Source of the DNA: Octopus sinensis
Taxonomy: Eukaryota
NCBI RefSeq assembly: GCF_006345805.1
Contig: NC_043007.1
Coordinates: forward strand, 14,818,001 to 14,882,000
Direction: 5' to 3'
DNA length: 64,000 bases
Shown here: positions 3,896 to 61,264 of the stretch, one piece after another
Layout of the letters: each line of letters opens with the position of its first letter
Position numbering within the stretch: position 1 is the first letter of the stretch
The notes under the pieces: model-generated
What the model was told of the DNA's origin: nothing
Seen by the model: only the letters and a program-made list of their open reading frames with translations
The model's database searches: none
Made by a program: the position numbers and the translations under genes

Positions 3896-4034
3896 ATTGA
3901 GATGAGACACACATTGAGAGATCCGTTGGAAAATGTAAGCCATGTATCAATCAAATCTGTACCATTCGCTGTTTCCAAGGAAGGGTTTATTGGTAACTAT
4001 GAGCCTGCCCCTAGAGAAGCACTCGACAGACCTG
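3896..4034 (+). CDS. GALNT7: GALNT7-like, first visible coding exon (stem region; IEMRHTL...GFIGNYEPAPREALDRPG)
   Basis: tttacag acceptor and gtaag donor; 139 nt, phase 0 to 1; GNYEP...PG resembles the GALNT7 stem (GNFEP...PG). The upstream TM exon was not found in the window. Confidence 0.8.
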
Positions 4035-10718: not shown

Positions 10719-10891
10719 TTGTAAGTTTTGGCATTATCCCGAAGAATCAGAACTGCCATCAGCAAGTGTGGTTATAGCGTTCCGTGATGAAGGTTGGTCC
10801 ACACTTCTGAGGACCATCCATAGCGTTATTAATATGTCTCCGCCAGCTTTACTCAAAGAGGTCATCTTGATTGATGACGAAAGTAATAAAG
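10719..10891 (+). CDS. GALNT7: GALNT7-like exon, start of GT-A domain ([36 protein letters not shown]...[11 protein letters not shown])
   Basis: ttgcag/gtcag; phase 2 to 1; matches the GALNT7 pattern CKYWHY...[21 protein letters not shown]. Confidence 0.95.
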
Positions 10892-14239: not shown

Positions 14240-14450
14240 GAAATTTTAAAGCAGATCTCAGTGTATATTTAAAAGATAATTTTAAAGACAAAGTGAACCT
14301 ATTTCGTAACAGCAAGAAAGAAGGTTTGATTCGTTCGAAGACAATCGGTGCTAAATATGCATCTGGAGATATCCTAGTATTTATGGATGCTCATTGTGAA
14401 TGTGGTCGGAACTGGTTGGTACCAATTTTAGCCCTGCTAGCACATAACAG
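14240..14450 (+). CDS. GALNT7: GALNT7-like exon with DxH motif (...EGLIRSKTIGAKYASGDILVFMDAHCECGRNWLVP...)
   Basis: tttcag/gtaatg; 211 nt, phase 1 to 2; DAH at 14386-14394. Confidence 0.95.
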
Positions 14451-17773: not shown

Positions 17774-17947
17774 AACCATCGTGGCATCTCCAGTCACTAA
17801 TGTAATTGACTGGGAAACTTTTGCTTACAAGACAACTTTTAGAGAGAAACATCATCATGGTATTTTTGAATGGGGGTTTCTTTATAAAGAGAGCAAAGTG
17901 CCAGATATGGAGCTGACGAGCAGAAAGTACAATAGTGAACCCTATCG
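17774..17947 (+). CDS. GALNT7: GALNT7-like exon (TIVASPVTNVIDWETFAY...HGIFEWGFLYKESKVP...NSEPYR)
   Basis: ttgcag/gtaac; phase 2 to 2; GIFEWGxLYKE...NSEPYR matches invertebrate pgant7. Confidence 0.95.
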
Positions 17948-20844: not shown

Positions 20845-20962
20845 TTCTCCAACCCTTGCTGGTGGCTTGTTTGCTATAGACGGCAAATATTTCTTTGAAC
20901 TTGGAGGTTTTGATCCAGGACTTCAGTCACAGGGAGGAGAGAATTTTGAATTATCTTTCAAG
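20845..20962 (+). CDS. GALNT7: GALNT7-like exon, Gal/GalNAc-T motif ([39 protein letters not shown])
   Basis: gtccag/gtaagt; phase 2 to 0. Confidence 0.95.
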
Positions 20963-23646: not shown

Positions 23647-23717
23647 ATATGGCAGTGTGGAGGCAGCATAAAGTGGGTCCCATGTTCCCATGTTGGATAC
23701 GTCCGTCAAACGCCCAT
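23647..23717 (+). CDS. GALNT7: GALNT7-like exon (IWQCGGSIKWVPCSHVGYVRQTPM); 3' boundary uncertain (23717 or 23761)
   Basis: ttccag acceptor, phase 0; IWQCGGSIxWVPCS is diagnostic; only weak donors are available. Confidence 0.85.
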
Positions 23718-24158
23718 GTTTTTAGACACCGTCCAAAATCTCAGTGATCTTGCTTTGGTTTGTATCTGTTATTGTAGATAAACATTACTATTTAGTACCA
23801 GTGAAAAACTGGGGTTAATTTGATCAGCTATAATGTCCCCCCCCTTCTATACCAGTGACAATGGTAGAAACTAATATTTGAAGACTGTGCAGTAAACTGC
23901 ATATTTAATTTATAGACATCAATTTCTAATTGTTCAAGAATAACATTTATTTATCATGTTGGTTTCATTGACCTCAGAGGACCTTCAAAGACCATAAGCT
24001 AATCTTTTAGTAGTGGGTGATCTTTAGAAGCAGATGAGTTTTTCTAATTCCGTTTAGAAGGTGATTACTGGTTGCTATAGTTGATAGCTGGTAACGAAAT
24101 TTGAGCTCTCTTTGTTATTCTCACAATGAATTTAAAAACAAAGAATTTGAGACATTAA

Positions 24159-25797: not shown

Positions 25798-26056
25798 GAA
25801 AGCTAACGCCTATCCATTTCCATTGTTTACTCAGAATTACATACGAGTTGTCGAAGTGTGGCTGGACAATGAACACAAACAGTATTTCTATGCGAGACAA
25901 CCTTCAATGGAAGAATACCCTATTCTTAACATTTCCAAACAGCTGGAATTTAAGAAGGAGCACGAATGTAAGAGCTTCAAATGGTTTCTGGAGAATGTAG
26001 CCAATGAAGTACTGGACTATTATCCACCACCGCCCCCTAATAAATATTGGGGCCAG
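25798..26056 (+). CDS. GALNT7: GALNT7-like exon, end of catalytic domain and linker (KANAYPFPLFTQNYIRVVEVW...CKSFKWFLENVANEVLDYYPPPPPNKYWGQ)
   Basis: cctccag/gtaagt; NYxRVVEVW and CKSFKWF motifs. Confidence 0.93.
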
Positions 26057-27989: not shown

Positions 27990-28091
27990 GTTATGTTGGA
28001 AAACACTAAAACTTGTAGTTATTGGCGGGCATCAGCTGCTAAAGAAAGAAATATTCGTATGAGTCCTTGCAAGTCCGACAAAGAAAGCCAG
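27990..28091 (+). CDS. GALNT7: GALNT7-like exon, ricin-type lectin alpha repeat (VMLENTKTCSYWRASAAKERNIRMSPCKSDKESQ)
   Basis: cattcag/gtaac; 34 codons, phase 0 to 0; two Cys and terminal Q spaced as in a lectin alpha repeat. Confidence 0.8.
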
Positions 28092-31170: not shown

Positions 31171-31302
31171 CTGTTTCGGTTATTTCGGTTAAATGTGAAA
31201 GGTCAATTGATATGGGATGAGTTCTGCATTGAAACAAGAAACGATATTTTATACATACAAGAGTGTCCTGTCCAACCTACTAGTAACTGGTCCTATCTAG
31301 AG
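31171..31302 (+). CDS. GALNT7: GALNT7-like exon, lectin beta repeat (LFRLFRLNVKGQLIWDEFCIETRNDILYIQECPVQPTSNWSYLE)
   Basis: ttttacag/gtaagc; 44 codons; matches pgant7 LVRLNAAGQL...CVE...C...W.Y. Confidence 0.88.
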
Positions 31303-33479
31303 GTAAGCTGATATTTTAACATACTGCTTTATATAATCTTTGTTATGGTTTTTGTTCATTTATGTTGATTTTACAGACAAAATGGAGCCTGGACAGCCCT
31401 CCAGCTGGTCACCTCCACTGAAACTATCCAAGCCATCTCGGTACGGAGAACAGGCCTTAAACGATGATGATGATGATGCTGATCATGATGATGATGATCA
31501 TCAATGCTTTACTAAATTATTGTACTACAACACAACACAAAGAATACCACACTATCACAGTGCATACTACATCACTATACTGTAACATATAGAGCACCAC
31601 TGTACTATTGTATATAGAGCCCCACTGTACTGAAATGCAGAAGGTTATCGCAACCCTACATCATCATTGTTTAATGCCTGCTTTCCATGCTGGCATGGAT
31701 TGGATGGTTTTGACTGAGGACTGGCGAGCCAGATGGCTGCACCAGGCTCCAATCTGATCTGGCAGAGTTTCTACAGCTGAATGCCCTTCCTAACGCCAAC
31801 CATTCTAAAAGTATTGTGGGTGCTTTTATGTGCCACCAGCCCAAGGGCCAGTCAGGCGGTAATGGCAATGGCCATGCTCAAATGGTGTTTTTTACGTGCC
31901 ACCTGCACAGGAACCAGTCCAGCAGCACTGGCAGTGGAGGCGCAATGGCCCAATGGTTAGGGCAGCGGACTCATGGTCAGAGGATCGCGGTTTCGATTCC
32001 CAGACTGGGCGTTGTGTGTGTTTATTGAGCGAAAACACCTAAAAAGCTCCATGAGGCTCCGTCAGGGGGTGGTGGCGACCCCTGTTGTACTCTTTCGCTC
32101 CAGCTTTCTCTCACTCTTTCTTCCTGTTTCTTGTCCCCAACTTCCTACGCAACTGCTGAGCCTGGATGCGCATTCATCCATCCATCGATGCTCTCGGTGT
32201 CGGGGGTTGACCTGCTTTCTCTTCTGCGGGTCTTATGAATAGCAAAGGACCACGTTTCGGACTTCTCCCACTGGGACGAAGACCGCTTTGCTCAACAGCA
32301 ACAGCAGCACTGGCAATGACCTCGCTTGAATGTCGTTTTTCATGTGCCACATATATGATATTGTTCTAGTAAGGGTGTGTTGCTATTTTGAAAATACTTC
32401 ATAGAGTGATTACAATGCTATGCATAGTTACAGATTGTGAAGACGTAACGGAAGAGCCCAAATGAGTCAACGGTGCTTCTTATATTGAGTGGAGAAATCC
32501 TGGAGAGATCACCAAGCTCTATCAGGGGAGTAACTGCAATGTATCCATTGGGGAAGTGTCCATGGTTTAAGGCGGCGAGCTGGCAGAAGCGTTAGCAAGC
32601 ATGGCAAAATGCGTAGCTGTATTTCGTCTGCCGCTATGTTCTGAGTTCAAATTCCACCGAGGTCGACATTGCCTTTCATCCATTCAGGGTCGATTAAATA
32701 AGTACCAGTTACGCACTGGGGTCGATACAACCGACTTAATCCATTTGTCTGTCCTTGTTTGTCCTCTCTGTGTTTAGCTCCTTGTGGGTAGTAAAGAAAT
32801 AGGTATTTCGCCCACCGCTACGTTCTGAGTTCAAATTCTACCGAAGTCGACTTTGCCTTTCATCCTTTCGGGGTCGATTAAATAAGTACCAGTTACGCAC
32901 TGGGGTCGATACAACCGACTTAATCTGTTTGTCTGTCCTTGTTTGTCCTCTCTGTGTTTAGCTCCTTGTGGGTAGTAAAGAAATAGGTTGTGTAATCAAC
33001 TAATGAAAGATTCACTGTGACTCAATCAAGCTCCTAATTTAAATTCCTAATAAGGGTGTTGAGGGTGTATGAGGGGCTCTGCAAGCCTCATTGGACTTAA
33101 AATTTTAGATTGTGTATTTGCTGGTGAGTTGACTCGATGCGTGGTCAAGTAAGAGAGCATTGTTGTGAGCATGCAATCTGCAGATGCACAACCTGGGTGA
33201 AGCGCCGACAGCTGGTGCAATAATCTTTTGTATGGGTGTTGCTGGCATTATATATATGGGCAAAATGGTCAGTGATGGTCTTCCTCAGTCACAAGTGGGC
33301 AGCCATCATCATCATCGTCATCATCATATGCCTGATGTGAAACGGCTGTACTACTACGGATATCAAGTAATTAAATAGATATATTTACCTTCTATACTGC
33401 CTAACTTTTTATGGTTCATATATACACATGTGTATATGTATATGTATATATATATATATATCACCTTGATCACCTTGAC

Positions 33480-33750
33480 CGACCAGTCTGTCAGGCGTCC
33501 ATTTGACACTGCTGATCACAGCACGCTGTCCACTCCTCTCTGGATCGCACCTTTCTCATCCACGTGATCCCAATTGTCTTCCTGAAATCGTAACTCCACC
33601 GTCTTCTGGGAGGTCTTCTGGGTGGTCTTTTCCGCTCATGCGGGTACCACTTGACAACTGCGTGTGTCCACCAATTATCGGTGAGCCGGGCAACATGTCC
33701 AGCCCATCTATACTTGCTGCGTGTATACTCTGCGATGTCTACCTGGGACA
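33480..33750 (-). mobile_element. RTE LINE C-terminal fragment
   Basis: KYRWAGHVARLTDNWWT...KRPPRRPPRRRWSYD motif. Confidence 0.8.
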
Positions 33751-33819
33751 GGAAGTAAATATGTGCCGAGATATATATATATATATATATATATGAACCA
33801 TATATATATATATGAACCA

Positions 33820-34230
33820 TAGGCGCAGGAGTGGCTGTGTGGTAAGTAGCTTGCTAACCAACCACATGGTTCTGGGTTCAGTCCCACTGGGTGGCATCTT
33901 GGGCAAGTGTCTTCTGCTATAGCCCCAGGCTGACCAATGCCTTGTGAGAAGATTTGGTAGACGGAAACTGAAAGAAGCCTGTCATATATATGTATATATA
34001 TATATGTGTGTATATGTGTTTCTGTGTTTGTCCCCCTAGCATTGCTTGACAACCAATGCTGGTGTGTTTACGTCCCCTTCACTTAGCGGTTCGACAAAAG
34101 AGACCGATAGAATAAGTACTGGCCTTACAAAGAATAAGTCCCGGGGTCGATTTGCTCGACTAAAGGCAGTGCTCCAGCATGGCCGCAGTCAAATGACTGA
34201 AACAAGTAAAAGAGTAAAAGAGTAAAGAGT
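33820..34230 (+). mobile_element. tRNA-derived SINE family B with CORE-like motif and internal microsatellite (other copies near 13345, 17110, 26116, 43030, 44470, 62300)
   Basis: A/B boxes, ttgggcaagtgtctt core, (agtaaaag)n tail. Confidence 0.8.
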
Positions 34231-34661: not shown

Positions 34662-34714
<53 letters not shown>

Positions 34715-34719
34715 TCATA

Positions 34720-35180
34720 TAATATAATGAAATTATTGTATACAGTGATCAGGTGCACCACAACTTGTCAGAGTATATGCAGTAATGTACAAATGTCAGA
34801 TACATGCTTGTGCGTGTATGGAGGGGAGAAAATCAGGTGTAGTGTTGGCGAATCTCAGGAAGCATGGAAGTTTTGAAGGATGCAGTGCTCCGACAGCTAA
34901 CAACTGATGCCAGCAGTTTGTTCCATGCTTCAGCAACTCTTAGCATGAAAAAATGTTTTCTGACTTTGTAAATATGTCCACGGGTGTTAGATGGGTGGAG
35001 TTTAAAAAGGTGCTCAGAGTTATTGTTTGTAAGATGGTTGATAATTTTATGGGTGTCTACCAAGTCAGCTGCCAGACGTCGGAGTTTCAATGTGTCCATG
35101 CCCAGGGAAGTAAGGCATTCAGGATATGGCAAATGCCTGATGGCGGGTATTCTTTTGGTTGCATGTCGTTTTTGGTTGCA
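34720..35180 (-). mobile_element. CR1-like LINE 3' fragment
   Basis: RHATKRIPAIRHLPYPECLTSLGMDTLKLRRLAADLVDT...NTRGH...RVAEAWNKL are CR1 C-terminal motifs. Confidence 0.8.
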
Positions 35181-35481
35181 TATGTATGTATGCAAGCATG
35201 TATTTATGTATGTATGTATGCATGTATGTGTGTGTGTTTGTATGTATGTGTATACACACACACATACACATATATATGTATACAAAATTTTAATTTCCAT
35301 CTCTCAAATCTACTATGGAACTGAACCTGGAACCACGAGGCTGGAAGGCAAATTTCTTACCATACACACACATCTATTGTCTTGAATCTCTGTAAGACAG
35401 CAGCCCCCCAACTCTAAAATATTTCTCCTCTCCACCTATCTCTATCAATCTAAATGTCTAATTTCTTTTATTTCATTCTAG

Positions 35482-36408
35482 AATACAAAACAAATTTTCA
35501 ACAGTCGTTTCCGAAAATGTGTTGAAGCAGCATCAAACTCTGTTCTTTGTCTCAAAGACTGTGATGCTAACAACAAGATGCAGCAATGGAGTTTTAAGAA
35601 ATTTAGGACCTGGGATGCTCCTAAACAACAACAACAACCTCAACAACCGCAGCAGCAGCAGCCGCCTCAACAACATGAACACCAAAAACAGCCTGAACAA
35701 CAACAACAACAACAACAACAACAAAAACAACCTGAACAACAACAACAACAACAAAAACAGCCTGAACAACAGGAACAAGAACAACAAAAACAACCTGAAC
35801 AACAACAACAACAAAAACAACCTGAACAACAACAACAACAAAAACAGCCTGAACAACAACAACAACAACAAAAACAACCTGAACAACAACAACAACAACA
35901 ACAAGAACAACAAAAACAGCCTCAACAACAACAACAACAACAACAAAAACAACCTGAACAACAACAACAACAACAACAAGAACAACAAAAACAGCCTCAA
36001 CAACAACAACAACAACAAAAACAACCTGAACAACAACAACAACAACAAAAACAGCCTGAACAACAACAACAAGAACAACAAAAACAGCCTGAACAACAAC
36101 AACAAGAACAACAAAAACAGCCTGAACAACAACAACAACAACAACAAAAACAACCTGAACAACAACAACAACAACTACAACAACAACAAAAACAGCCTCA
36201 ACAACAACAACAACAACAAAAACAGCCTCAACAACAACAACAACAACAACAACAACAAAAACAGCTGCAACATCAACAACAAGAACAACAAAAACCGCCT
36301 CAACAACAACAACAACAACAACAAAACACAGCCTCAACAACAACAACAACAACAACAACAACAAAAACAACCTCAACAACAACAACAACAACAACAAAAA
36401 CAGCCTGA
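35482..36408 (+). CDS. GALNT7: GALNT7-like terminal exon: lectin gamma repeat (NTKQIFNSRFRKCVEAASNSVLCLKDCDANNKMQQWSFKKFRTW) plus Gln-rich then Thr-rich tail
   Basis: ttcattctag acceptor in phase 0; QQW ricin motif; in frame with ORF 35578..36408. The stop position depends on a 1-nt insertion at 36327. Confidence 0.85.
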   Translation, partial: NTKQIFNSRFRKCVEAASNSVLCLKDCDANNKMQQWSFKKFRTWDAPKQQQQPQQPQQQQPPQQHEHQKQPEQQQQQQQQQKQPEQQQQQQKQPEQQEQEQQKQPEQQQQQKQPEQQQQQKQPEQQQQQQKQPEQQQQQQQEQQKQPQQQQQQQQKQPEQQQQQQQEQQKQPQQQQQQQKQPEQQQQQQKQPEQQQQEQQKQPEQQQQEQQKQPEQQQQQQQKQPEQQQQQLQQQQKQPQQQQQQQKQPQQQQQQQQQQKQLQHQQQEQQKPPQQQQQQQQNTASTTTTTTTTTKTTSTTTTTTTKTA

Positions 36409-36440
36409 ACAACAACAACAACAACAACAAAAACAGCCTC

Positions 36441-36478
<38 letters not shown>

Positions 36479-36687
36479 AAACAGCCGCAACATCAACAAA
36501 AACAACAAAAACAGCCTGAACAACAACAACAACAACAAAAACCGCCTGAACAACAACAAGAACAACAAAAACAGCCTCAACAACAACAACAACAAGAACA
36601 ACAAAAACAGCCTTAACAACAACAACAACAACAACAAAAACAACCTGAACAACAACAACAACAACAACAACAAAAACAGCCGCTACT

Positions 36688-36718
<31 letters not shown>

Positions 36719-36850
36719 AAACAGCCTCAACAACAAAAATAACAACAACAACAGCGTCAACAACAAAAATGGCCCCAACAAGGAGAACAAGAACAGCCTC
36801 AATAACAACAACAACAGCAGCCTCAACAAGAACAACTATAGCAGCAGTAG
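35620..36850 (+). repeat. (CAA)n-based compound coding minisatellite, unit caa aaa cag cct gaa (caa)n
   Basis: Direct reading of the sequence; degenerates after about 36740. Confidence 0.95.
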
Positions 36851-37029
36851 CAACTACAGTGGCAGCAACAGAAACACCAACAACAGCAATATTTTCCCTT
36901 AATTTTGTTCACCTGCCAAAATGCTTAACTGGTTTTACTAAATTTATCATTAGTCAACCTACTGAAGGACATTATTACAAATTAAATTCATTATTACAGA
37001 ATAACTATTATGATTATTATCATTATTTC

Positions 37030-39632
37030 CTTTGACGAAATAGAAGGGGATATAGCTTCACTTAATGTGGAAGACAACTGGAGATTTCTACGGGACAATC
37101 TGCTGACAGCCACTGACCAGATCTGTGGATGGAGCAAAGTCCCATCTCAACCCAGAGTAACATGGTGGTGGAACAATGTGGTTGACAGGGCTATTAGACA
37201 AAAGAAACAGGTTTGGAGGGACTGGAAGAACGGTGGTAGCAGGGAATTGTATCAGACAGCCAGAAGGGAAGCTAGGAGACAGGTTTATTTAGCCAGAGGG
37301 GAAGCGGATAAGAAAAAATTTGCCAATATTCTGCGCCGTGAGGATGAAAGACTTGAGGTGTTTCGTGTTGCAAGACAGTGTGTGAGAGAGAATCGTGACG
37401 TGGTAGGAGAGAAATGTGTCCGCATGGATGATGGTTCACTTGCACTAAATGAGGATGCAAAGAGAGAATGGGATAAAGAGAGTCTGCCGAATGTCAACCC
37501 AACAGAGGGACCAGCCATCTGAGTTGACAATTCTTTGGTAGTTAAGGCAATTAGAAGCATGAAGACAGGGAAAGCCCCAGGCCCATCAAGAATTACTGCA
37601 GAGATGCTCAAAATATCTGGCTGTGTCGGCTATAACCTAGTCACCCGTATAGTTAACCAGGTGATACACGAAGGAGTCATACCCAATGACTGGTGTAGCA
37701 GCATACTAGTCAACTGCTACAAAGGTAAAGGAGACGCCCTAGATACAAATAATTACAGAGGTATCAAGCTGTTGGATCAGGTAATGAAGGTTACAGAGAG
37801 GGTCATAGCCCAACTGATTAGGGAGAGAGTCAACTTGGATGAGATGCAGTTTGGTTTCATGCCAGGGAAAAGCACCACTGATGCCATATTTCTGGTGAGA
37901 CAGCTGCAGGAGAAATACCTAGCCAAAGATAAGCCCCTGTACTTGGCTTTCGTTGACATGGAGAAAGCCTTTGACAGGGTCCTCCGATCCCTTATCTGGT
38001 GATCAATGAGGAAACTAGGGATAGATGAATGGCTGGTGAGGGCTGTGTAAGCCATGTACAGGGATGCCGTAAGTAAGGTTAGGGTTGGCAACATGTACAC
38101 AGAAGAATTCAAAGTAGAGGTTGGGGTCCACCAGGGTTCAGTACTCAGCCCCCTCCTATTTATCATAGTCTTCCAGGCAATTACGGAGGAATTCAAGACA
38201 GGTTGCCCCTGGGAGCTCCTCTATGCTGACGACCTTGCTCTAATTGCTGAGTCACTATCAGAACTGGAGGAGAAGTTCCAGGTGTGGAAGGAGGGTTTAG
38301 AATTGAGGGGCCTTAGAGTCAACCTAGCTAAAACCAAAGTACTAATAAGTAGGAAGGGAGACAATCCACAAATGTCTTCAGGAAGATGGCCCTGCTCGAT
38401 CTGTAGAAAAGGTGTAGGTAGAAACTCTATAAGATGTACCCAGTGTAAGCTATGGACACATAAGAGGTGCAGCAATGTCAAAGGAAGGCTAACTAGGAAG
38501 ATAGTTTTTGTATGTGGCAGATGTTTGGGAGCATTAAACTCTGAAAATCTGCAGAAAACAACCTCCGTCACTTTCCAGGGGGAAAAACTAGAAGTAGTTG
38601 ATAGCTTCCGTTATCTAGGTGACCAAGTCAGTAGTGGGGGTGGATGTGTTGAAAGTGTAACTGCTAGAGTAAGAATAGCCTGGGCAAAGTTTAGGGAGCT
38701 CTTACCTCTGCTGGTGACTAAAGGCCTCTCGCTCAGAGTAAAAGGCAGACTGTATGATGCATGTGTACGAACTGCCATGCTACATGGCAGTGAAACATGG
38801 GCCATGACTGCTGAGGACATGCGTAAGCTCGCGAGGAATGAAGCCAGTATGCTCCGATGGATGTGTAAAGTCAGTGTGCATATTCGACAGAGCGTTAGTA
38901 CCTTGAGAGAAATGTTGGACCTAAGAAGCATCAGTTGGGGTGTGCAAGAGAGACGATTGCGCTGGTATGGTCATGTGGCGAGAATGTATGAAGATAGGTG
39001 TGTGAAAAAGTGCCAATCCCTAACAGTGGAGGGAACCTGTGGAAGAGGTAGACCTAGGAAAACCTGGGATGAGGTGGTGAAGCACGACCTTCGAACTTTA
39101 GGCCTCACTGAGGAAATGACCAGTGACCGAGACCTTTGGAAATATGCTGTGTGTGAGAAGACCAGGCAGGACAAGTGAGTCCAGCCCACTTATGCATGCC
39201 TTTCCTCCCTTAGACACACAAAGACCTGTTGAGGCAAGCGAAGTCGATATCGAACCTCATCCGATGACAGGCACCCATGTCAATCCCCCTTTGCTTGCGA
39301 GACCTGTTGGGGCAAGTGAAATCGGAATCGGAATTGAACCAATCCTATGACTGGCACCCGGCAGATGCCAGGACCCCTGGACTGGTGGCACATAAAATGC
39401 ACCAATCCGACCGTGGCTGTTGCCAGCCTCGCCTGGCACCTGTGCAGGTGGCACGTAAAATGCACCCACTACACTCACGGAGTGGTTGGCGTTAGGAAGG
39501 GCATCCAGCTGTAGAAACATTGCCTGATCAGACTGGAGCCTGGTGCGGCCTTCTGGCTTCCCAGATCCCCGGTCGAACTGTCCAACCCATGCTAGCATGG
39601 AGAACGGACATTAAACGATGATGATGATGATG
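37030..39632 (+). mobile_element. 5'-truncated RTE-type LINE (RT with inserted PHD-like finger), three premature stops, (GAT)n tail
   Basis: ORFs 37010, 37535 and 38054 share one frame; QFGF, DMEKAFD, GVHQGSVLSP, YADD, YLG motifs. Confidence 0.95.
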
Positions 39633-39779
39633 ATTATCATATTTCAATTGAATAGCATTTTAATTTTATCTTCTGACCAAATCTCAATCAGAGACCTAAA
39701 GCATATACATATTAATATTAGATGGAAAGAAACCTCTTGAGAATATGGGCGGTTGATCTCAACACTGTGTTTTGAATCT

Positions 39780-40170
39780 CATAAATTGTTGGTTTCCCAG
39801 GGATCTGGTCAAAAAATTTGTCAGTACCTTTCTTGGGATGGTTTTGGTTTTTAATTGCTATGTCCTAGATATCTCAATCTCAAAGTCTTTATATTTCAAT
39901 GGTTTTTTAAATTCCTTTACTAAGATGTTTCTCTCAGTGGGTAATGTCATGTCAGTTAACAGGCATATTTTTTGTTTTAGGTCTTTGATGATGATGTCAG
40001 ATCTGTTAGCATTTATTTGCCTGTCTGTATGTATTCCATTATCCCAAAGGATGGTAACAGTTCCTCCCTCAGTGACTGGCTCTGAATGGTGTCTATACCA
40101 GTTCTTAGGGTGCAGAATATCATAGTGGTGGCATATTGTCCAGTGCAAGTATCAGCCAACTTGATCATGC
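39780..40170 (-). mobile_element. R4/Dong-like retrotransposon fragment (restriction-like endonuclease region)
   Basis: TILWDNGIHTDRQINANRSDIIIKD...LLTDMTLP...KY. Confidence 0.75.
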
Positions 40171-44184: not shown

Positions 44185-46375
44185 AACAACAAACAAGATG
44201 AGGGCAAATATCCGTCAAATGTCAATAATGTACATAATTCCTCATCTCTTAAACATAGAACTGAAAGAAAATTCTGATTGAAGTTTGGGGCTACAGTGTC
44301 AGTTCTTCCTTAATCTCTTTATGTCTTCGTACAAAGGAGGAGATGCACTGCTAAATGGTGCATCACCAAGCTTCATGATTAAAGGCTATAGGAAACATTG
44401 GGTGATGGTAGATGTAACACATGCCAAAGGATTCTTCAGAGAGCCCTGGTAGTCAGTAGAAATTTTGCTATACTCTTTTACTTGTTTCAGTCATTTGACT
44501 GCGGCCATGCTGGAGCAATGCCTTTAGTCGAACAACTCAACCCCAGGACTTATTCTTTGTAAGCCTAGTACTTATTCTATCAGTCTCTTTGGCTGAACTG
44601 CTAAGTGACGGGGATGTAAACACACCAGCATTGGTTGTCAAGCAATGCTCTAGGGACAAACACAGACACACAAACACACACATACATATATATATACATA
44701 TATATATACGACAGGCTTCTTTCAGTTTCCGTCTACCAAATCCACTCACAAGGCATTGGTCGGCCCGGGGCTATAGCAGAAGACACTTGCCCAAGATGCC
44801 ATGCAGTGGGACTGAACCCGGAACCATGTGGTTGGTTAGCAAGTTACTTACCACACAGCCACTCCTGCGCCTATACAGGATAATCTTGAGCAAATGCTGT
44901 CTTTTTTCCATTCTAGAAATGTGCTCTGTTTAATGCTGTTGTAAATTGAATAGTGTGGCCCTTGTGCTGGTGACTTCAGCCTGTTTTAGGATTTCAATCA
45001 TCATCATCATCATCGTTTAACGTCCGCTTTCCATGCTAGCATGGGTTGGACGGTTATGACTGAGGGCTGGCAAACCAGATGGCTGCACCAGGCTCCCATC
45101 TTGATTTGGCAGAGTTTCTACAGCTTGATGCCCTTCCTAACGCCAACCACTCCGAGAGTGTAGTGGGTGCTTTTATATGCCACCAGCACGGAGGCCAGTC
45201 AGGCAGTACTGGCAATGACCTCGCTCGAATCTTTTTACACATGCCACCAGCACAGGTGCCAGTAAGGCGACGTTGATAACGATCACGCTTGAATGATGCC
45301 CTTTTACATGCCACTTGCACAGAAGCCAGTTGGCTGCTCTGGTAATGATCATGCTCGGATGGTGCTCTTGGCACCCTACTAGCTCGGGCACAAGTGCCAG
45401 TAAGGCGATGCTGGTAACGATCACACTCGAATGGTAAAAAAATTATTCCAGTCAATGGCAAGGGTGGTGTTATGCAGGCAGTCTTCAAGAAGTCATTGGT
45501 GTTTATGGTAGGTAATTCACTACTCAGTGCCACAGACACACATACATGCTAGTACACACATACACACATTCCCCAGTAGTGATAGGTTCCATCAACTACA
45601 GCTTGCCTTCCACTTCACCCATCCTACCGTTATATTTTCCTGCATCATGATCTGAAATGTCAGGCTTTTATTTCTCTAATTTAAATATGGAGGCCAGATC
45701 TATCCAATATTTATTTGCTTCCATTACTGGTTGTATACTCTGGTGGACTACATCTGCCAACATTATAAATTAAATCTGATCCTCTAGAAACAGCTGTTGG
45801 ACATGCGACACCATAACTTCTCCCCTTTAATTTTCTCTGTCGTTTGTACTCTGTGTAAGTTTGCTCTGTTAATATATAAATATCTATATATTTATACTTG
45901 AATATTCATCGTCTGAAAATTTTCCAGTCTTTGTTTTATCTCTATTTACATCATCATTGTTTAACGTCCGTTTTCCATGCTGGCATGGGTTGGACGGCTC
46001 GACCGGGGTCTGGGAAGCCAGGAGGCTGCGCCAAGCTCCAGTCTCATCTGGCAGTGTTTCTACAGCTGGATGCCCTTCCTAACGCCAACCACTCTGTGAG
46101 TGTAGTGGGTGCTTTTTACATGCCACCGGCACAGGAGCCTGAGGCTGGCAAACAGCCACGAATGGTCACCGACATGTATACATATTTCGTATATTAAACT
46201 CAAGCAGTTTTATTTGTCTATATGTATTATTGTCTCCATAGCTGCTCACCTGGATTCCTCTTATAGCCACACTTTACCCTGAAGACTTGGTCCTTGGTAA
46301 AAATATCAGAGTGTAAGTTCAAATCATTTGAGCACTACTGTTTTCTATACTGAGAATCTCTGGATCTCATGTTGA

Positions 46376-47075: not shown

Positions 47076-49902
47076 ATCATCATCATCATCATCATTTAGC
47101 GTCCGTTCTCCATGCTAGCATGGGTTGGACGGTTCAACTGGGGTCTGTGAAGCTGGAAGGCTTCATCAGGCCCAGTCAGATCTGGCAGTGTTTCTACGGC
47201 TGGATGCCCTTCCTAACGCCAACCACTCCGTGAGTGTAGTGGGTGCTTTTTACGTGCCACCTGCACAGGTGCCAGACAGAGCTGGCAAACGGCCACGAAC
47301 GGATGGTGCTTTTACGTGACACCGGCACGGGGCCAGGCGAGGCTGGCAACGGACACGAACGGATGGTGCTTTTACGTGCCACCAACATGGGGGCCAGACA
47401 GAGCTGGCAAACGGCCACGAAACGGATGGTACTTTTACGTGTCACCGGCACGGGGGCCAGGCGAGGCTGGCAATGGGCACGAACGGATGGTGCTTTTACA
47501 TGCCACCGACATGGGGGCCAGACAGGGCCGGCAAACGGCCACGAACGGATGGTGCTTTTACGTGTCACCGGCACGGGGGCCAGGCGAGGCTGGCAACGGA
47601 CACGAACGGATGGTGCTTTTACATGTCACCGACATGGGGGCCAGACAGGGCTGGCAAACGGCCACGAACGGATGGTGCTTTTACGTGTCACCGGCACGGG
47701 GGCCAGACAGAGCTGGCAATCGGCCACGAACGGATGGTGCTTTTACGTGTCACCGGCACGGGGGCCAGACAGAGCTGGCAAACGGCCACGAACGGATGGT
47801 ACTTTTACGTGTCACCGGCACGGGGGCCAGGCCAGGCTGGCAACGAACACGAACGGATGGTGCTTTTACGTGCCACCTACACGGGGGCCAGACAGGGCTG
47901 GCGAACGGCTACGAACGGATGGTACTTTTACGTGTCACCTGCACGGAGGCCCTGATGTTGATCGACCTCAATTTGGTTTGATCTTGATTTTGACTGTTCT
48001 CACTGGTCTTGCCAGGTTTTCTCACGCACAGCATACCTCCAAAGGTCTCGGTCACTGGTCATTTCCTTGGTGAGACCTAAAGTTCGAAGGTCGTGCTTCA
48101 CCGCCTCGACCCAGGTTTTCCTGGGTCTACCTCTTCCACAGGTCCCCTCAACTGCCAGGGTGTGGCACTTTCGCACACAACTATCTTCAGCCATTCTCAT
48201 CACATGACCATACCAGCGCATACGTCTCTCTTGCACACAACAACTGATACTTCTTAGATTCAACTTTTCTCTCAAGGTACTTACACTCTGTCGATTATGA
48301 ACACTGACGTTACACATCCATCGGAGCATACTAGCTTCATTTCTTGCGAGCTTACGCAAATCCTCAGCAGTCACAGCCCAAGTTTCACTACCATGTAGCA
48401 TGGCTGTACGTACACATGCATCATACAGTCTGCCTTTTACTTTGAGCGAGAGGCCTTTTGTCACCAGCAGAGGTAAGAGCTCTCTAAACTTTGCCCAGGC
48501 TATTCTTACTCTAGCAGTTATACTCTCAGCGCACCCGCCCCCGCTACTGACTTGGTCACCTAGGTAACGGAAACTATCAACTACTTCTAGCTTTTCTCCC
48601 TGGAAAGTGACGGAAGTTGGTCTCAGAGCATCTTCAGTGTTAATTGTTCCTGAGCATCTGCCACATACAAAAACCATCTTCCTAGTTAGCCTTCCTTTGA
48701 CATTGCTGCACCTCTTATGTGTCCATAGCTTACACTTGGTGCATCTTATAGAGTTTCTACCTACACCTTTTCTACAGATCGAGCAGGGCCATCTACCTGA
48801 AGGCGTTTGTGATTGGTCTACCTTCCTACTTATTAGGACTTTGGTTTTGGCTAGGTTGATTCTAAGGCCCTTCGATTCTAAACCTTGTTTCCATACCTGA
48901 AACTTCTCCTCTAGTTCTGATAGAGACTCAGCAATTAGAGCAAGGTCATCAGCATAGAGGAGCTCCCAGGGGCATCCTGTCTTGAATTCCTCCGTTATTG
49001 CCTGGAGGACTATGATAAATAGGAGGGGACTGAGGACTGAACCTTGGTGGACCCCAACCTCTACCCTGAATTCTTCACTGTACTCGGTGCCAACCCTCAC
49101 CTTACTAGCAGCGTCTCTGTACATGGCTTGTACAGCTTTCACTAACCATTCATCTATCCCTAGTTTCCTCATTGACCACCAGATGAGGGATCGGGGGACC
49201 CTGTCGAAGGCTTTCTCCATATCAACAAAAGCCAGGTATAGGGGCTTGTCTTTGGCTAGGTATTTCTCTTGCAGCTGTCTTACCATGAAAATAGCATCAG
49301 TAGTACTTTTCCCTGGCACGAACCCAAACTGCATCTGATCTAGGCTAACTCCCTCTCTAATTAGTTGGGCTATAACCCTCTCCGTAACCTTCATTACCTG
49401 ATCCAGCAGCTTGATACCCCTGTAGCTATTTGTATCTAGGGCGTCACCTTTACCTTTGTAGCAGCTGACTATTATGCTGCTACACCAGTCATTGGGAATG
49501 ACTCCTTCGTGTATCACCTGGTTAACTATACGGGTGACTAGGCTATAGCCGACACTACCAGATATTTTGAGCATCTCTGCAGTAATTCCTGATGGGCCTG
49601 GGGCTTTCCCTGTTTTCATGCTTTTAATTGCCTTATCTACTAAGGAACTGTCAACTCGGATTGCTGGTCCCTCTGTTGGGTCAACATTCGGCAGACTCTC
49701 TTTATCCCATTCATTTTCCTCATTCAGCAACCTTTCATAGTGGCTTCTCCAAACCTCTCTCTTTGCATCCTCATTTAGCGCAAGTGAGCCGTCATCCGTG
49801 CGAACACATTTTTCTCCTACCACGTCACGATTCTCTCTCACACACTGTCTTGCTATACGAAATACCTCAAGTCTTTCATCCTCACGGCGCAGGACATTGG
49901 CA
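47076..49902 (-). mobile_element. 5'-truncated RTE-type LINE with uninterrupted RT ORF (48000-49902) and expanded 3' UTR array
   Basis: ORF 48000..50021 is stop-free; same family as 37030-39632; (CAT)n tail near 47076; the 5' break falls at a (TA)n tract. Confidence 0.95.
47240..47950. repeat. Tandem array of about 11-12 units of 59-64 bp inside the LINE 3' UTR
   Basis: Repeated ggatggtgcttttacgtg...ctggcaa...cacgaac. Confidence 0.9.
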
Positions 49903-50120
49903 TATATATATATATATATGAATTTGAATAAATGAATAAAAAATGAAAACAAAAACAAACATGAGGACGTGCACACGATGTGCATTAGCCTGACGCTTGG
50001 TGAAAAGAGAGAGTTTAACATTCAGAGCATAACTCTTTGTTAGAAAGGAGAAAGGGAAAAGTCCAAAGAAAGAGAAGAAATCATCAATGGTGTATGTATA
50101 GTTACATTGCTGAAGTGTGA

Positions 50121-51574: not shown

Positions 51575-52162
51575 GTAAAATTAATGTTAAATCTTTTAAT
51601 ATAAATAACAATAAACATTATACTTTTCATGTTTAAAAAATATATAATGTTTAACATTTCATATAACACAAGCACATATATATTTATATATAATGATGAT
51701 TTTCATAGTTTATTTCTGCAGGTCCACCTTGCCAAGTTTTACAAATGTTTGCTACAAAATTCTTAAAAATCAGAAGATTGACACATATGTTTGCTCCAGG
51801 GATAATTTAAATTATATAAATATTTTTTTCTGTATTTCTTAGCTGTGGCAAATTTGCGGTCAAAGTAAGGAAATTGGAAAAAAAAACTTTAGTAGTAATT
51901 AAACCACACAACACCACTCCATGCTACCACCTGAGCTACTTTGAGAAGCCAAGAGCTATAGTTTTCTTTATTGAGGTGAACAGAAGAAATGGTGCTATAT
52001 GCTTATTGGTAAGAGTAAAACCATTATGGCTAAGCTATTTCTAGTAGCAAAACTATACTATAAGCTAGTTTATACAAGTCTATAATATTTTCATCTAGTA
52101 TCAAGTGCTGTTTACAACTAAATATATCAGAGAAATGCTTGGTGCTAGAATCAGTTCTATAC

Positions 52163-52692: not shown

Positions 52693-53710
52693 TTCTATAC
52701 TATATTCTGATTGTGATTGGCTTTTTTGAAGGGCAGGTAACTGTTAAAAATTTTCAGGAAAATACCTTAAATTTTACTAAACAATATTATTAAAAGAAAT
52801 ATGGCCAGGCAGACCTGTCTAAGTCCTGCAAGCTTTGTAAAATAGATATTAAGTGAAATGATGGCGATGATGACGATGATGATGATGATGATAACGACAA
52901 TGCTGATTATGTACTTGTAATTAGTTCATTCTTGAACATTTGATGGTTTGTAAAGAATTTTGTGACATGAGCAACTTAATAGAAGACAAAATGTTTCAGT
53001 CTCAAGAATCTGATAAATAATTCCATAGATTTTTAAAATTTTATTTTAGTAGAAATAACCTAGCAGTTTAGTACTAGACATTTCTTTAGTTTTTTTTATA
53101 CATCTACTTCATTCCACAGTATGACTAGTTAATATTTTCTCTCTTGTAATAATGCAACATTAAATAAAATTGATCATGAAAATAAATAAAAACAATTCAA
53201 AATTAACACATATACATACTTGAAAATATTCGCAAATAGGCAACGCACCAAGTTTCAAAAAATGAACTGTTTAAATTTTTATACCTAAAAATCATGAAAT
53301 AGCACAATTGAATAATCTTTGTACATTCCACCAGAAATCCACATCCTGGTATGTCTGAGATATCTTAAGAGTATAAATATTAGTTGACTATTTCACGACA
53401 AAGCATGTGCTTCATAGACACTACAAAACATTTAGATTTTGTTTTTATTTTCCTTTCTAAACCATTGATCAAAATATTTTCAAGGAATCGGAATTGGTCA
53501 CAGCTTTAAATCGACAAAGAAGTCGATGCAATGTAAAGAATTTTCTGTACAATCTGTAAAATTTGGTTTCAATCATATACATTGTAATTGGAATAACTTT
53601 TCAATTGAAGATTTTTATAGATGCAGTAAATAATTCTGACAGTCAAGACAATGGCACAGAAGAAACATTCCTTTAAATAGTTGGAGGAGAGAAGGTCACT
53701 AGTTAGTGTA

Positions 53711-60172: not shown

Positions 60173-60812
60173 TTAAGACGTGTGGTTATAATGTCCTGTG
60201 GTCATCGTATAGTGAAAATGGTGCTAAATATTAACTGAAGTTTAATGGTTTCATCTAAAAGTCAGTAAGAGAGCCTCTCAAAATGCAACCAAGGGTTTTA
60301 AAGAATGACTGCAGCATGGCTCCACCGGTATGGGTGCCATTTGCATGGCACTGTTATCTGTCACAGCTGTGATTTTGTTTGGCTTCATGGGTCTTCTTCC
60401 CAAGCATGACATAATGCCAAAGATCTTGGTCATTGCCTCCTTGAGACCCAACGCTCAAAGGAACTCAGCCACCTCACCTACGTGAGGCCCTGCGGTCTCC
60501 CACTCTCTCTCTCACTCTCCTTCTCCTGCACACTCAAACACAATCATGCACACACAATTACTTATACACACACACACATTATATATATATCTACACACAC
60601 ACACACATACACATACATATCTACACATCACACACACACATATCTACACACACAAACACAATCATGCACACACAATTACTTATACACACATGTACATACA
60701 CATATATCTACACACACACACACATATGCAAGTATATACATGTACATATCTATACACATACGTACATCTCAGTTATATAAATTAAACAAACAACAAACAA
60801 ATGTAAACTCAC

Positions 60813-60903
60813 CAGTAATCTGGCACCATTTCGTTCCAATAGACATTTTATCTGAGATACCGTCCCTCATGTACACTTGCTTTCGGTTGTCAATAGCCCA
60901 CAC
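60813..60903 (-). CDS. TECPR2: TECPR2 exon (VWAIDNRKQVYMRDGISDKMSIGTKWCQITG)
   Basis: ttttcag/gtgagt; 91 nt, phase 0 to 1. Confidence 0.92.
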
Positions 60904-61264
60904 CTGAAAAGAAGAAGCACCAACCTCACCCTTAATTACATTGATACAGTTTATTCCAGCCCCCACAACCTTTTTTTTCACCTGTGTCACACTTATATTC
61001 TTCTCAAAATTCAACAACACACCTGGACCAAAAATATAATTAAAAGTAGAGGGAAAAAAATTATATTCAGATTACACTGCAGCACACCTAGCATTGTCTT
61101 GTGGCACACCAGTGTGCCATGACATACTGGTTGCGGCACACTGGTTTATTCTATGCTGTTAGAATTTCTGCATTATAACAATGCTCATTTGAATTCCTTT
61201 ACAACCATTTTGCTAATACTTTCCTGGTTGATGTAATAGTTTATTGTTGAGGGTAAATATTTTG

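What the first reader, a model, noticed from the sequence alone, without database searches (positions are those of the whole stretch)
35482..36408. GalNAc-transferase extended by a ~260-aa Gln-rich repeat tail after the lectin domain
pgant7-type proteins end right after ...QQWxFKxxRxxW. Here TGG is followed by gat gct cct aaa and then (QKQPE-Qn) repeats, with no stop or evident donor in between. A luminal polyQ, coiled-coil or prion-like extension on a degenerate GALNT is not something I recognise. It could drive self-assembly or scaffolding in the Golgi or in secretions (inference). CAA repeats are stop-free in all frames, so openness alone does not show selection; the evidence is the direct read-through from a validated exon.
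Basis: partly seen in the sequence, partly recalled or inferred. Interest (0 to 1): 0.8.

Follow-up and report, generated by a model that had tools for sequence, protein, structure and literature searches.

The report
Gln-rich repeat tail on octopus pseudo-GalNAc-transferase
An octopus-only, catalytically crippled copy of the sugar-transferase GALNT7 has lost its normal stop codon and reads straight into a 1.2-kb CAA-based minisatellite, which gives it a long, floppy, glutamine-rich tail; the tail exists in three octopus species, but its length and end point differ between them, so it is a real but evolutionarily loose appendage and not a defined new domain.

Summary
The window is Octopus sinensis chromosome CM016869.1. 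Exon 35482-35613 encodes the last lectin repeat of a GALNT7-like gene. It runs without a stop or a GT donor into a CAA/KQPE minisatellite (35624-36836), and the ORF ends at TGA 36406-36408, giving a 264-aa tail.

All 24 other GALNT7 relatives checked stop 0-4 codons after the last Trp. The read-through is present in O. vulgaris (339-aa tail) and in O. bimaculoides (at least 54 aa, then an assembly gap). RefSeq XP_029642743.2 already reads 41 codons into the tail and is marked "partial".

The tail looks like a DNA-level repeat that happens to be coding:
- The array continues about 430 bp past the stop.
- Four of six frames are open for more than 200 aa.
- Its untranslated part also changes in multiples of 3.
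- The ORF ends by a +1 insertion in O. sinensis and by a CAG>TAG change in O. vulgaris.

The tail is 70% Gln, has a Pro about every 10 residues, and its longest Gln run is 10. This argues against a coiled coil or classic polyQ and fits a disordered chain.

The enzyme body has lost the WGGEN Trp and a Mn-binding His. It evolves at dN/dS 0.74-0.91 yet keeps an intact ORF. No transcript or protein data could be reached. Interest is moderate to low.

The parts
3896..4034 (+). Stem-region exon (IEMRHTLRDPLEN...REALDRPG). The first exon, with the signal anchor MKRKLRLLLFIAVLVFCAFQLYIF, lies about 8 kb upstream of the window.
   Evidence: tblastn of the P0002 N-terminus; splice sites read; the first exon is seen in L001/L002
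7642..7780 (+). Exon (DYGKPVIVRGKER...PPDFRMT)
   Evidence: identical to RefSeq model P0002
10719..10891 (+). Exon, start of the GT-A catalytic domain (CKFWHYPEE...IDDESNK)
14240..14450 (+). Exon with the DxH motif (MDAHCEC)
17774..17947 (+). Exon (TIVASPVTNVIDWETF...SEPYR)
20845..20962 (+). Exon with the degenerate Gal/GalNAc-T motif ([14 protein letters not shown]; W replaced by Q)
23647..23757 (+). Exon with CSHVGYV (Mn-ligand His replaced by Tyr); donor GCTTTG|gtttgt
25835..26056 (+). Exon at the end of the catalytic domain and the linker (NYIRVVEVWLD...NKYWGQ)
27990..28091 (+). Lectin alpha sub-domain exon (CSYWRAS...; the sugar-binding Asp is lost). It differs from O. vulgaris at 8 of 102 nt.
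31171..31302 (+). Lectin beta sub-domain exon
35482..35613 (+). Lectin gamma sub-domain part of the last exon, ending ...NNKMQQWSFKKFRTW, where all other GALNT7 proteins stop within 0-4 codons
35614..35685 (+). Degenerate proximal edge of the array (DAPKQQQQPQQPQQQQPPQQHEHQ). It is identical in O. vulgaris and recognisable in O. bimaculoides (DIPKQQQQQQQQPQQQQ...).
35686..36326 (+). 20 complete and 1 truncated tandem units AAA-CA(A/G)-CCT-(G/C)AA-(CAA)n of 27-42 nt, all multiples of 3, read as KQP(E/Q)Qn
36327..36327 (+). Extra C (caaaaCacag against consensus caaaaacag) that shifts translation from the Gln frame to the Thr frame. It is absent in O. vulgaris and could be real or a long-read consensus error.
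36328..36408 (+). Thr-rich end of the ORF (…TTTTTTTTTKTTSTTTTTTTKTA) and the stop TGA at 36406-36408, made by the spacer CCTGAA in the third frame
36409..36840 (+). Untranslated continuation of the same array. In the Gln phase it carries TAA at 36614, 36740 and 36803. The TAA at 36614 (cagccTTAAcaa) is shared with O. vulgaris and is the likely ancestral stop.
36981..36986 (+). ATTAAA, the only poly(A)-signal hexamer between 35601 and 37400, and the candidate 3' end of the mRNA

Best explanation
The gene is an Octopus-lineage paralogue of GALNT7. It encodes a type II Golgi membrane protein with a GT-A catalytic domain and a ricin-type lectin domain.

Shown:
- The gene has lost residues that every other family member examined keeps. 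These are the Trp of WGGEN, the third Mn2+-ligand His, in O. bimaculoides also the His of DxH, and the alpha-site Asp of the lectin.
- It lacks the stop codon that its relatives have 0-4 codons after the last Trp.
- A CAA-based minisatellite with units AAA CAR CCT SAA (CAA)n, all multiples of three, starts 9 nt after that Trp.
- The exon's frame enters one of the two stop-poor frames of the repeat.
- No splice donor lies in the repeat. Any mRNA that contains this exon therefore encodes a long tail of KQP(E/Q)Qn units. The tail is 264 aa in this assembly, 339 aa in O. vulgaris, and at least 54 aa before a gap in O. bimaculoides.
- The array changes by slippage and unit gain or loss. It continues past the stop codon. 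The ORF is cut at different places by different lesions in sister species.

Inferred:
- The tail is made as a hydrophilic, proline-punctuated, intrinsically disordered luminal appendage.
- It is tolerated, or at most selected for bulk properties, and not for a defined sequence, length or fold.
- It does not form a coiled coil or a polyQ/prion-type aggregate.
- The protein as a whole is a pseudoenzyme that is kept translatable, because its ORF is intact in three species, but it is under very weak sequence constraint.
For: - **Identity of the window.** It has 0 mismatches over 45,736 nt to O. sinensis GCA_006345805.1.
- **Gene model.** There are 11 exons in the window with canonical borders, all in phase. 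They are identical to RefSeq XP_029642743.2, which ends at window 35736 inside the tail and is flagged partial.
- **Family.** Human GALNT7 structure 6IWQ matches at E 1e-121 across residues 26-546, and Pfam Glycos_transf_2 matches at 3e-26.
- **Lost residues and C-termini.** 24 of 24 other homologues keep W, H and D and end 0-4 aa after the last Trp.
- **Conserved read-through.** It is seen in O. vulgaris and O. bimaculoides.
- **Minisatellite behaviour.** All units are multiples of 3 apart from one +1 insertion. The array goes on for 430 nt after the stop. Four of six frames give ORFs of 213-365 aa. The unused Asn frame has 0 stops over 1.56 kb in O. vulgaris, while the Gln frame has 5. In the part untranslated in both species, the length differences are 27, 9 and 30 nt. 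The ORF ends at TGA after a frameshift in O. sinensis, and at CAG>TAG in O. vulgaris; both lie upstream of a shared TAA.
- **Composition.** The Gln part has Q 165, P 24, E 21 and K 20 of 237 residues. The longest Gln run is 10, and Pro spacing is about 10. CAA outnumbers CAG by 149 to 16, as expected for slippage.
- **Weak constraint on the body.** dN/dS is 0.91 (sinensis-vulgaris), 0.83 (sinensis-bimaculoides) and 0.74 (vulgaris-bimaculoides) over 500 codons. No 50-codon window is below 0.4.
- **ORF nonetheless kept.** There is no stop or frameshift in any of the three species. None of 5000 simulations with 185 random substitutions stayed stop-free. Introns show about 12.6 gap openings per kb.
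Against: - No transcript, ribosome or peptide evidence could be reached, so translation of the tail is inferred from the ORF and from RefSeq's partial model.
- Public models disagree on the 3' end. The O. vulgaris model skips this exon. Two O. bimaculoides models jump from the Gln run to downstream exons, although the second jump starts at the edge of an assembly gap.
- An array of roughly 0.9-1.5 kb has persisted at the same place across dS of about 0.14. The body ORF is also maintained although catalysis is lost. Both facts would also fit a tail that is itself the selected part.
- The proximal 237-339 codons carry no stop, although CAA is one transition from TAA.
- The +1 insertion may be an assembly error. 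In that case the O. sinensis tail would be about 333 aa and all Gln-rich.
Confidence: 0.6

Rival explanations
1. The tail is the selected, functional part. On this view the dead GalNAc-transferase body serves as a carrier (signal anchor plus folded luminal module). It carries a Gln/Lys-rich repeat polymer that works as a luminal or secreted material, for example a transglutaminase-cross-linkable or condensate-forming scaffold.
For: - The ORF of the body is kept intact over dS of about 0.14 while its residues drift almost neutrally and catalytic residues are lost. Something other than catalysis is therefore being preserved.
- A Gln-rich array follows the last Trp in all three Octopus genomes.
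- The tail is longer than 235 aa in both fully assembled species.
- Regular K and Q residues give both partners of a transglutaminase cross-link (an inference from composition).
Against: - The array extends beyond the stop.
- The ORF is truncated by different lesions in two sister species.
- Frame-keeping is explained by the unit structure alone.
- Codon use is almost pure CAA.
- No homologous tail was detected in 1.84 billion representative proteins, and no Pfam family matches.
- No Logan transcript-derived members sit in the paralogue's protein clusters, whereas the canonical GALNT7 cluster has them (weak evidence).
Confidence: 0.2
2. The tail is not made in vivo. Either the gene is a silent or decaying duplicate, or its mRNAs use another 3' end that skips exon 35482-35613, for example the exon at 52925-53017 used in the O. 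vulgaris model. In either case the open frame over the repeat is only conceptual.
For: - dN/dS is close to 1, and exon substitution rates are about equal to intron rates.
- Catalytic and lectin residues are lost.
- The O. vulgaris model CAI (P0004) joins the beta-lectin exon to a distant exon, and an older O. bimaculoides model stops after the beta-lectin exon.
- No Logan members sit in the paralogue's clusters.
Against: - The last lectin exon keeps its acceptor, frame and QxW motif in three species, with a local pN/pS of 0.63.
- The whole body has no stop or frameshift, against an expectation of several.
- RefSeq models in O. sinensis and O. bimaculoides include this exon and enter the Gln run.
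- The O. vulgaris model also drops internal exons, which points to a poor prediction.
Confidence: 0.15
3. The read-through is an assembly artefact: a stop after the last Trp was lost, or a foreign repeat was misjoined.
For: The O. sinensis assembly is built from noisy long reads, and the single +1 insertion at 36327 is of the kind such assemblies produce (an inference).
Against: The 141 nt after the Trp codon are identical in the independently assembled O. vulgaris genome. O. bimaculoides shows the same W-D-(A/I)-P-K-Qn junction. Both flanks of the array are collinear between species.
Confidence: 0.03

Closest known systems
GALNT7 / Drosophila pgant7-type polypeptide GalNAc-transferases (CAZy GT27; human GALNT7 structure 6IWQ/6IWR)
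   Same: The domain order and exon-encoded motifs match from the stem to the last QxW of the lectin. The alignment covers residues 26-546 at E 1e-121. The gene falls with GALNT7 sequences in a distance tree.
   Different: - It lacks the WGGEN Trp, the third Mn ligand His and the alpha-site Asp.
- It sits on a long branch and evolves at dN/dS of about 0.8.
- It carries a tail of 264-339 aa, where 24 of 24 relatives stop 0-4 residues after the last Trp.
Catalytically inactive glycosyltransferase paralogues (e.g. human GALNTL5, a GALNT-like protein without detectable activity; Cosmc/C1GALT1C1, an inactive paralogue that chaperones T-synthase). Recalled from my own knowledge, not tested here.
   Same: It is a family member that has lost catalytic residues yet is retained as an open gene.
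   Different: Those proteins are truncated or compact and sequence-conserved. This one keeps the lectin domain, drifts almost neutrally and has gained a long repeat tail. No partner or function is known.
Coding minisatellites / VNTR proteins with Gln-rich repeats (e.g. involucrin's species-variable Gln-rich 10-codon repeats, recalled from my own knowledge; variable Gln-rich repeats in transcription factors, PMC4543046)
   Same: The tandem units are multiples of three. Copy number changes quickly between close species. The glutamine codons are slippage-prone, and the product is low-complexity and probably disordered.
   Different: - The repeat is appended to a luminal glycosyltransferase fold, not to a cytosolic or nuclear protein.
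- It runs on into the 3' UTR.
- Its stop position is set by random lesions.
Stop-loss C-terminal extensions into former 3' UTR sequence
   Same: The family-typical stop right after the last Trp is missing, and translation continues to the next stop that happens to occur.
   Different: The ancestral stop cannot be traced at the DNA level. The closest relative with a normal end (Logan transcript P0005: TGG AAA TAA) has an unrelated 3' UTR. The extension is therefore not shown to be an old UTR.

Membership tests
GT27 polypeptide GalNAc-transferase, GALNT7 subfamily | GT-A catalytic domain followed by a ricin-type lectin domain, alignable end to end with a solved GALNT7 | tested here: met
   6IWQ_A at E 1.4e-121 over query residues 26-546; Pfam PF00535 at 3.4e-26. 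Pfam Ricin_B_lectin did not reach E 0.01 in my scan, though it is listed in the precomputed hits.
GT27 polypeptide GalNAc-transferase, GALNT7 subfamily | DxH Mn2+-binding motif | tested here: met
   DAH is present in O. sinensis and O. vulgaris. In O. bimaculoides it is DAP, so the His is lost.
GT27 polypeptide GalNAc-transferase, GALNT7 subfamily | Third Mn2+ ligand His in CSRVGH | tested here: not met
   Tyr in O. sinensis and O. vulgaris, Arg at that column in O. bimaculoides; His in 24 of 24 other homologues.
GT27 polypeptide GalNAc-transferase, GALNT7 subfamily | Gal/GalNAc-T motif WGGENxE | tested here: not met
   QGGEN (O. sinensis, O. vulgaris) and RGGEN (O. bimaculoides); Trp in 24 of 24 others; the Glu is retained.
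GT27 polypeptide GalNAc-transferase, GALNT7 subfamily | Lectin alpha-site C-x-D sugar-binding Asp and QxW repeats | tested here: inconclusive
   The alpha Asp is replaced by Tyr or Asn, while the gamma QQW is kept. The beta site was not assessed.
GT27 polypeptide GalNAc-transferase, GALNT7 subfamily | C-terminus within a few residues of the last Trp | tested here: not met
   264 aa follow the Trp here, against 0-4 in 24 of 24 others.
GT27 polypeptide GalNAc-transferase, GALNT7 subfamily | GalNAc transfer to Ser/Thr of peptides | not testable with these tools
   This needs an enzyme assay. The lost ligands predict little or no activity (an inference).
PolyQ / prion-like (Q/N-rich) aggregation domain | Long uninterrupted Q/N stretches with few charges and few prolines | tested here: not met
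   The longest Gln run is 10. Pro is 10% and K plus E are 17% of the 237-aa Gln part.
Coiled coil | Heptad pattern of hydrophobic residues in a proline-free helix | tested here: not met
   Only 2 Leu and 1 Ala occur in 237 residues, and Pro recurs every 9-14 residues.
Coding minisatellite (VNTR within an ORF) | Tandem units of 3n nucleotides whose number differs between close relatives | tested here: met
   Units of 27-48 nt are all 3n apart from one +1 insertion. The array is 1.2 kb in O. sinensis and 1.56 kb in O. vulgaris, at 1.7% flank divergence.
Coding minisatellite (VNTR within an ORF) | Repeat maintained by selection on the protein (frame and stop position conserved; excess of synonymous change) | tested here: not met
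   The stop position differs between species. The array continues after the stop. 3n indels also occur in the untranslated part. Codon use is 90% CAA.

The most novel reading that the evidence does not exclude
An Octopus-specific GALNT7 duplicate has been converted from an enzyme into a carrier for a Gln/Lys/Pro/Glu-rich repeat polymer. Selection keeps the whole ORF translatable so that the tail is delivered into the secretory pathway. There it would act as a cross-linkable or phase-forming material or as a steric brush. This would be a new way of making a structural or secreted protein from a glycosyltransferase scaffold.
Probability: 0.15. Interest if true: 0.65.

Novelty: new variant of a known kind. 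Interest (0 to 1): 0.35.

Why it matters
If the tail is made, this is, as far as I could find, the first GT27 family member with a long C-terminal low-complexity extension beyond the lectin domain. It sits on a copy that has lost catalytic residues but is kept open while drifting almost neutrally. That combination makes it a compact natural case for two questions: how pseudoenzymes are retained, and how coding minisatellites are tolerated in the secretory pathway.

There is also a practical point. Five public gene models of this locus have five different 3' ends, and none contains the full tail. The O. bimaculoides chromosome assembly has a gap exactly in the array. The locus is therefore a useful warning for annotation of repeat-terminated genes. 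If the tail is merely tolerated, which I think most likely, the finding is a curiosity of limited reach.

Tried and rejected
**Searches that gave nothing**
- A 121-aa query made of two exons found only one unrelated fragment. It was too short for a database of 5.8 billion sequences.
- A C-terminal query that included 41 tail residues found nothing, probably because Gln words swamped the candidate stage.
- phmmer of the last exon plus the Gln part against 1.84 billion representatives gave no hit at E<=0.001. This is uninformative beyond saying that no recognisable homologous tail exists.
- Two literature searches found nothing on this gene or on Gln-rich tails in octopus.
- The look-up of XP_014776901.1 was not on record.

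I did not fold the tail alone, since a single-sequence model of a low-complexity chain would say nothing.

**Readings I dropped**
- I first suspected a frame break between the exons at 7642-7780 and 10719-10891. It was a misreading of the donor (GA|gtaagt) and was resolved.
- My first donor for the exon at 23647 was wrong. It was corrected to 23757 from the RefSeq model.
- I first read the O. bimaculoides models as showing a short Gln run with a real splice to downstream exons, and therefore a lineage-specific expansion in O. sinensis and O. vulgaris. I rejected this after seeing that the Gln run ends in a 726-N assembly gap.
- The idea that the repeat is a dispersed satellite was rejected. 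It occurs only at this locus in the window and in the two orthologous loci.
- A relation between the tail and the 3' UTR of the nearest normal-ended relative was rejected, because the sequences are unrelated.
Full report
**1. What is in the sequence**

The window matches Octopus sinensis assembly GCA_006345805.1, chromosome CM016869.1, with no mismatch over 45,736 compared bases. A GALNT7-like gene lies on the plus strand. I rebuilt it from stop-to-stop open segments and splice sites. The exons are 3896-4034, 7642-7780, 10719-10891, 14240-14450, 17774-17947, 20845-20962, 23647-23757, 25835-26056, 27990-28091, 31171-31302 and 35482 onward. All have AG/GT borders and compatible phases.

The conceptual protein is identical to RefSeq XP_029642743.2, "N-acetylgalactosaminyltransferase 7, partial" (P0002). 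The first exon of that model, which holds the signal anchor, lies about 8 kb upstream of the window.

The last exon begins at 35482 after a good acceptor. It encodes the gamma repeat of the lectin domain, ending ...NNKMQQWSFKKFRTW (Trp codon at 35611-35613). It continues GAT GCT CCT AAA and then enters a repeat. The first in-frame stop is TGA at 36406-36408, so 264 residues follow the last Trp. There is no GT between 35614 and 36408.

**2. Anatomy of the repeat**

TRF reports a period-3 AAC array from 35624 to 36836. It resolves into 31 units of the form AAA CA(A/G) CCT (G/C)AA (CAA)n. They are 27-48 nt long and are read as KQP(E/Q)Qn. The unit core occurs 28 times against 0 expected by chance, and only at this place in the window.

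Every unit is a multiple of three except at one point. An extra C at 36327 (caaaaCacag against consensus caaaaacag) moves translation from the Gln frame to the Thr frame. The ORF then ends 27 residues later (NTASTTTTTTTTTKTTSTTTTTTTKTA) at the first CCTGAA spacer, which reads TGA in that frame.

The array itself continues for another 430 nt or so after the stop. In the Gln phase this distal part carries TAA at 36614, 36740 and 36803. The only poly(A) hexamer nearby is ATTAAA at 36981. A LINE-type reverse-transcriptase element starts about 30 nt later.

**3. Is the open frame more than chance?**

The repeat is real, but its openness is mechanical.
- Four of the six frames over the array give ORFs of 213-365 aa.
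- Given that no stop lies in the 9 nt before the array, an incoming frame has a two-in-three chance of being long-open.

**4. Relatives**

A full-length query found 1095 homologues. In an alignment of 24 other GALNT7-type proteins from molluscs, brachiopods, annelid-like taxa and insects, every one ends 0-4 residues after the last Trp. The missing stop is thus a derived feature.

The same alignment, together with the alignment to the human GALNT7 structure 6IWQ (E 1e-121), shows which invariant residues the gene has lost:
- the Trp of WGGEN (Gln here, Arg in O. bimaculoides);
- the third Mn2+-ligand His (Tyr here and in O. vulgaris, Arg at that column in O. bimaculoides);
- the alpha-site Asp of the lectin (Tyr or Asn).

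O. bimaculoides has additionally lost the His of DxH (DAP).

In a distance tree the three Octopus sequences form a long branch. Their sister is an unidentified transcript-derived sequence (P0005) that has all the motifs and a normal WK-stop end. The canonical Octopus GALNT7 sits elsewhere. Canonical GALNT7 from O. vulgaris, O. sinensis and O. bimaculoides fall in one 90%-identity cluster. The paralogue is only 77% identical between O. sinensis and O. bimaculoides.

**5. The orthologous loci**

*O. vulgaris (L001, GCA_951406725.2).* The same exon is present, and the 141 nt after the Trp codon are identical. Its array is longer (60711-62270) and stays in the Gln phase throughout. The ORF runs 339 tail codons to a TAG at 61728 (aaaTagcct, a CAG>TAG change). 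Further on it has a TAA at 61995 (cagccTTAAcaa), which is shared with the window (36614).

The likely ancestral stop is therefore this shared TAA, near the distal end of the array. Each species now has its own earlier truncation, a frameshift in O. sinensis and a nonsense change in O. vulgaris. The O. sinensis frameshift could also be a long-read consensus error. Without it the tail would be about 333 aa.

In the distal part, which is untranslated in both species, the length differences are 27, 9 and 30 nt. Frame-keeping is therefore a property of the repeat and not evidence of selection. In O. vulgaris the unused Asn frame has no stop over 1.56 kb, while the Gln frame has five.

*O. bimaculoides (L009, GCA_001194135.2).* The exon and the junction W-D-I-P-K-Q8-P-Q7-E-Q-K-P-Q11... 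are present. After 169 nt the Gln-rich run ends in a 726-N assembly gap (39116-39841). Behind the gap the post-array flank resumes. An array of roughly 0.9 kb therefore probably exists there too.

The two RefSeq models of that species jump from the Gln run to downstream exons. The homologues of those exons in the window are at 45436-45510, 46269-46315 and 51844-51885. These jumps are best read as ways around the gap. In the window the first of those pieces has an in-frame stop and no acceptor upstream.

Altogether five public models have five different 3' ends, and none contains the full tail.

**6. Constraint on the gene**

Nei-Gojobori estimates over 500 codons:

| Pair | dN/dS | dS |
|---|---|---|
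| O. sinensis - O. vulgaris | 0.91 | 0.017 |
| O. sinensis - O. bimaculoides | 0.83 | 0.136 |
| O. vulgaris - O. bimaculoides | 0.74 | 0.149 |

No 50-codon window falls below 0.4, and the nucleotide-sugar-binding region is near 2. Exon divergence is about 11%. This is no lower than in alignable syntenic intron, which is about 9% with 12.6 gap openings per kb.

Yet no exon has a stop or a frameshift in any of the three species, and all splice sites are kept. None of 5000 simulations with 185 random substitutions stayed stop-free. The only exon length differences are 3 nt and a 9-nt acceptor shift. The gene is therefore not a plain pseudogene. Something keeps it translatable while its residues are nearly free to change.

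**7. Nature of the tail**

The Gln part (237 aa) has 165 Q, 24 P, 21 E, 20 K, 3 H, 2 L, 1 D and 1 A. The longest Gln run is 10, and Pro recurs every 9-14 residues. Codon use is 149 CAA to 16 CAG. No Pfam family matches.

This composition rules out a canonical coiled coil, because there is no hydrophobic heptad and Pro is frequent. It also falls short of polyQ or prion-like criteria, because the runs are short and 17% of residues are charged. The most likely state is an extended, disordered, hydrophilic chain in the Golgi lumen, or outside the cell if the stem is cleaved (an inference).

The Thr-rich end in this assembly would be an O-glycosylation-type sequence. It depends on the single extra base and is absent in O. 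vulgaris.

**8. Explanation and rivals**

*Best explanation (about 0.6).* A stop-less, catalytically degenerate GALNT7 paralogue reads into a slippage-driven coding minisatellite. The tail is made, but only as a labile low-complexity appendage that is tolerated or selected for bulk properties alone.

*Rival 1 (about 0.2).* The tail is the selected payload and the dead enzyme is its carrier. In favour are the maintained ORF, the loss of catalysis and the presence of the array in three species. Against are the continuation of the array past the stop, the species-specific truncations and the pure CAA usage.

*Rival 2 (about 0.15).* The exon or the gene is not expressed, so the tail is only conceptual. 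In favour are a dN/dS near 1, the discordant models and the absence of Logan transcript-derived members in the paralogue's clusters. Against are the conserved last exon and the intact ORF.

*Rival 3 (about 0.03).* Assembly artefact. This is excluded for the junction by three independent assemblies.

**9. Known or new**

The gene and the first 41 tail codons are already in RefSeq, but the full tail is not annotated anywhere I could see. I found no paper on it. Coding minisatellites, stop-loss extensions and inactive glycosyltransferase paralogues are all known kinds. Their combination on a GT27 protein is a new variant.

**10. Limits**

I could not reach transcript or peptide data. The last homology search, meant to find transcript fragments, returned nothing. 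The organism behind P0005 is unknown.

Noticed in passing
window 37010-39178 (+) and 48000-50021 (-): There are two copies of a LINE-type retrotransposon (Pfam RVT_1 plus a PHD-like finger). The plus-strand copy is broken into three ORFs and starts about 30 nt after the only poly(A) signal behind the repeat. The minus-strand copy has a 673-aa ORF.
   Followed up: partly
window 27990-28091 (lectin alpha sub-domain exon): This exon differs from O. vulgaris at 8 of 102 nt, against about 1.5% elsewhere in the gene. Most changes alter amino acids (CSYWRASAAKERN against CSNWEASSAGERN). O. vulgaris resembles O. bimaculoides here, so the burst is on the O. sinensis side. It could be local positive selection, gene conversion or assembly error.
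   Followed up: partly
window 45436-45510, 46269-46315, 51844-51885, 52925-53017: These short exon-like pieces have splice sites and are used as 3' exons of this gene in O. bimaculoides and O. vulgaris models. They match no family. They may belong to a separate transcript or be annotation artefacts. The first has no usable acceptor in O. sinensis.
   Followed up: partly
L009 39116-39841 (O. bimaculoides CM046611.1): A 726-N assembly gap sits exactly in the Gln-rich array. The RefSeq model XP_052827964.1 splices from the gap edge to a terminal mini-exon. The true tail length in this species is unknown.
   Followed up: yes
window 3896-35613 (whole gene body) versus L001 and L009: The coding exons diverge as fast as alignable intron (dN/dS 0.74-0.91), yet they have no stop, no frameshift and no lost splice site in three species. 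This is an unusual mix of near-neutral residue change and a preserved ORF.
   Followed up: yes
window 35181-35272 and many introns (e.g. 33418-34027, 34664-34726): Dense (TATG)n, (TG)n and (AT)n microsatellites occur here. A recurring SINE-like element is scattered through the introns on both strands; its translations repeat as ...VPVMHWGRCNRLN...CLSPLCLAPCG.
   Followed up: no
L002 1690-7956 (upstream of the window, O. sinensis): A Helitron_like_N gene call lies on the minus strand just upstream of the GALNT7-like gene.
   Followed up: no
L003 (Logan SRR29271458 contig) and 16 other transcript contigs: The nearest relative of the Octopus paralogue outside the genus (P0005, 615 aa) has all catalytic motifs and a normal WK-stop end. 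It is known only from RNA-seq assemblies of an organism I could not identify. It would date the duplication and the stop loss.
   Followed up: partly
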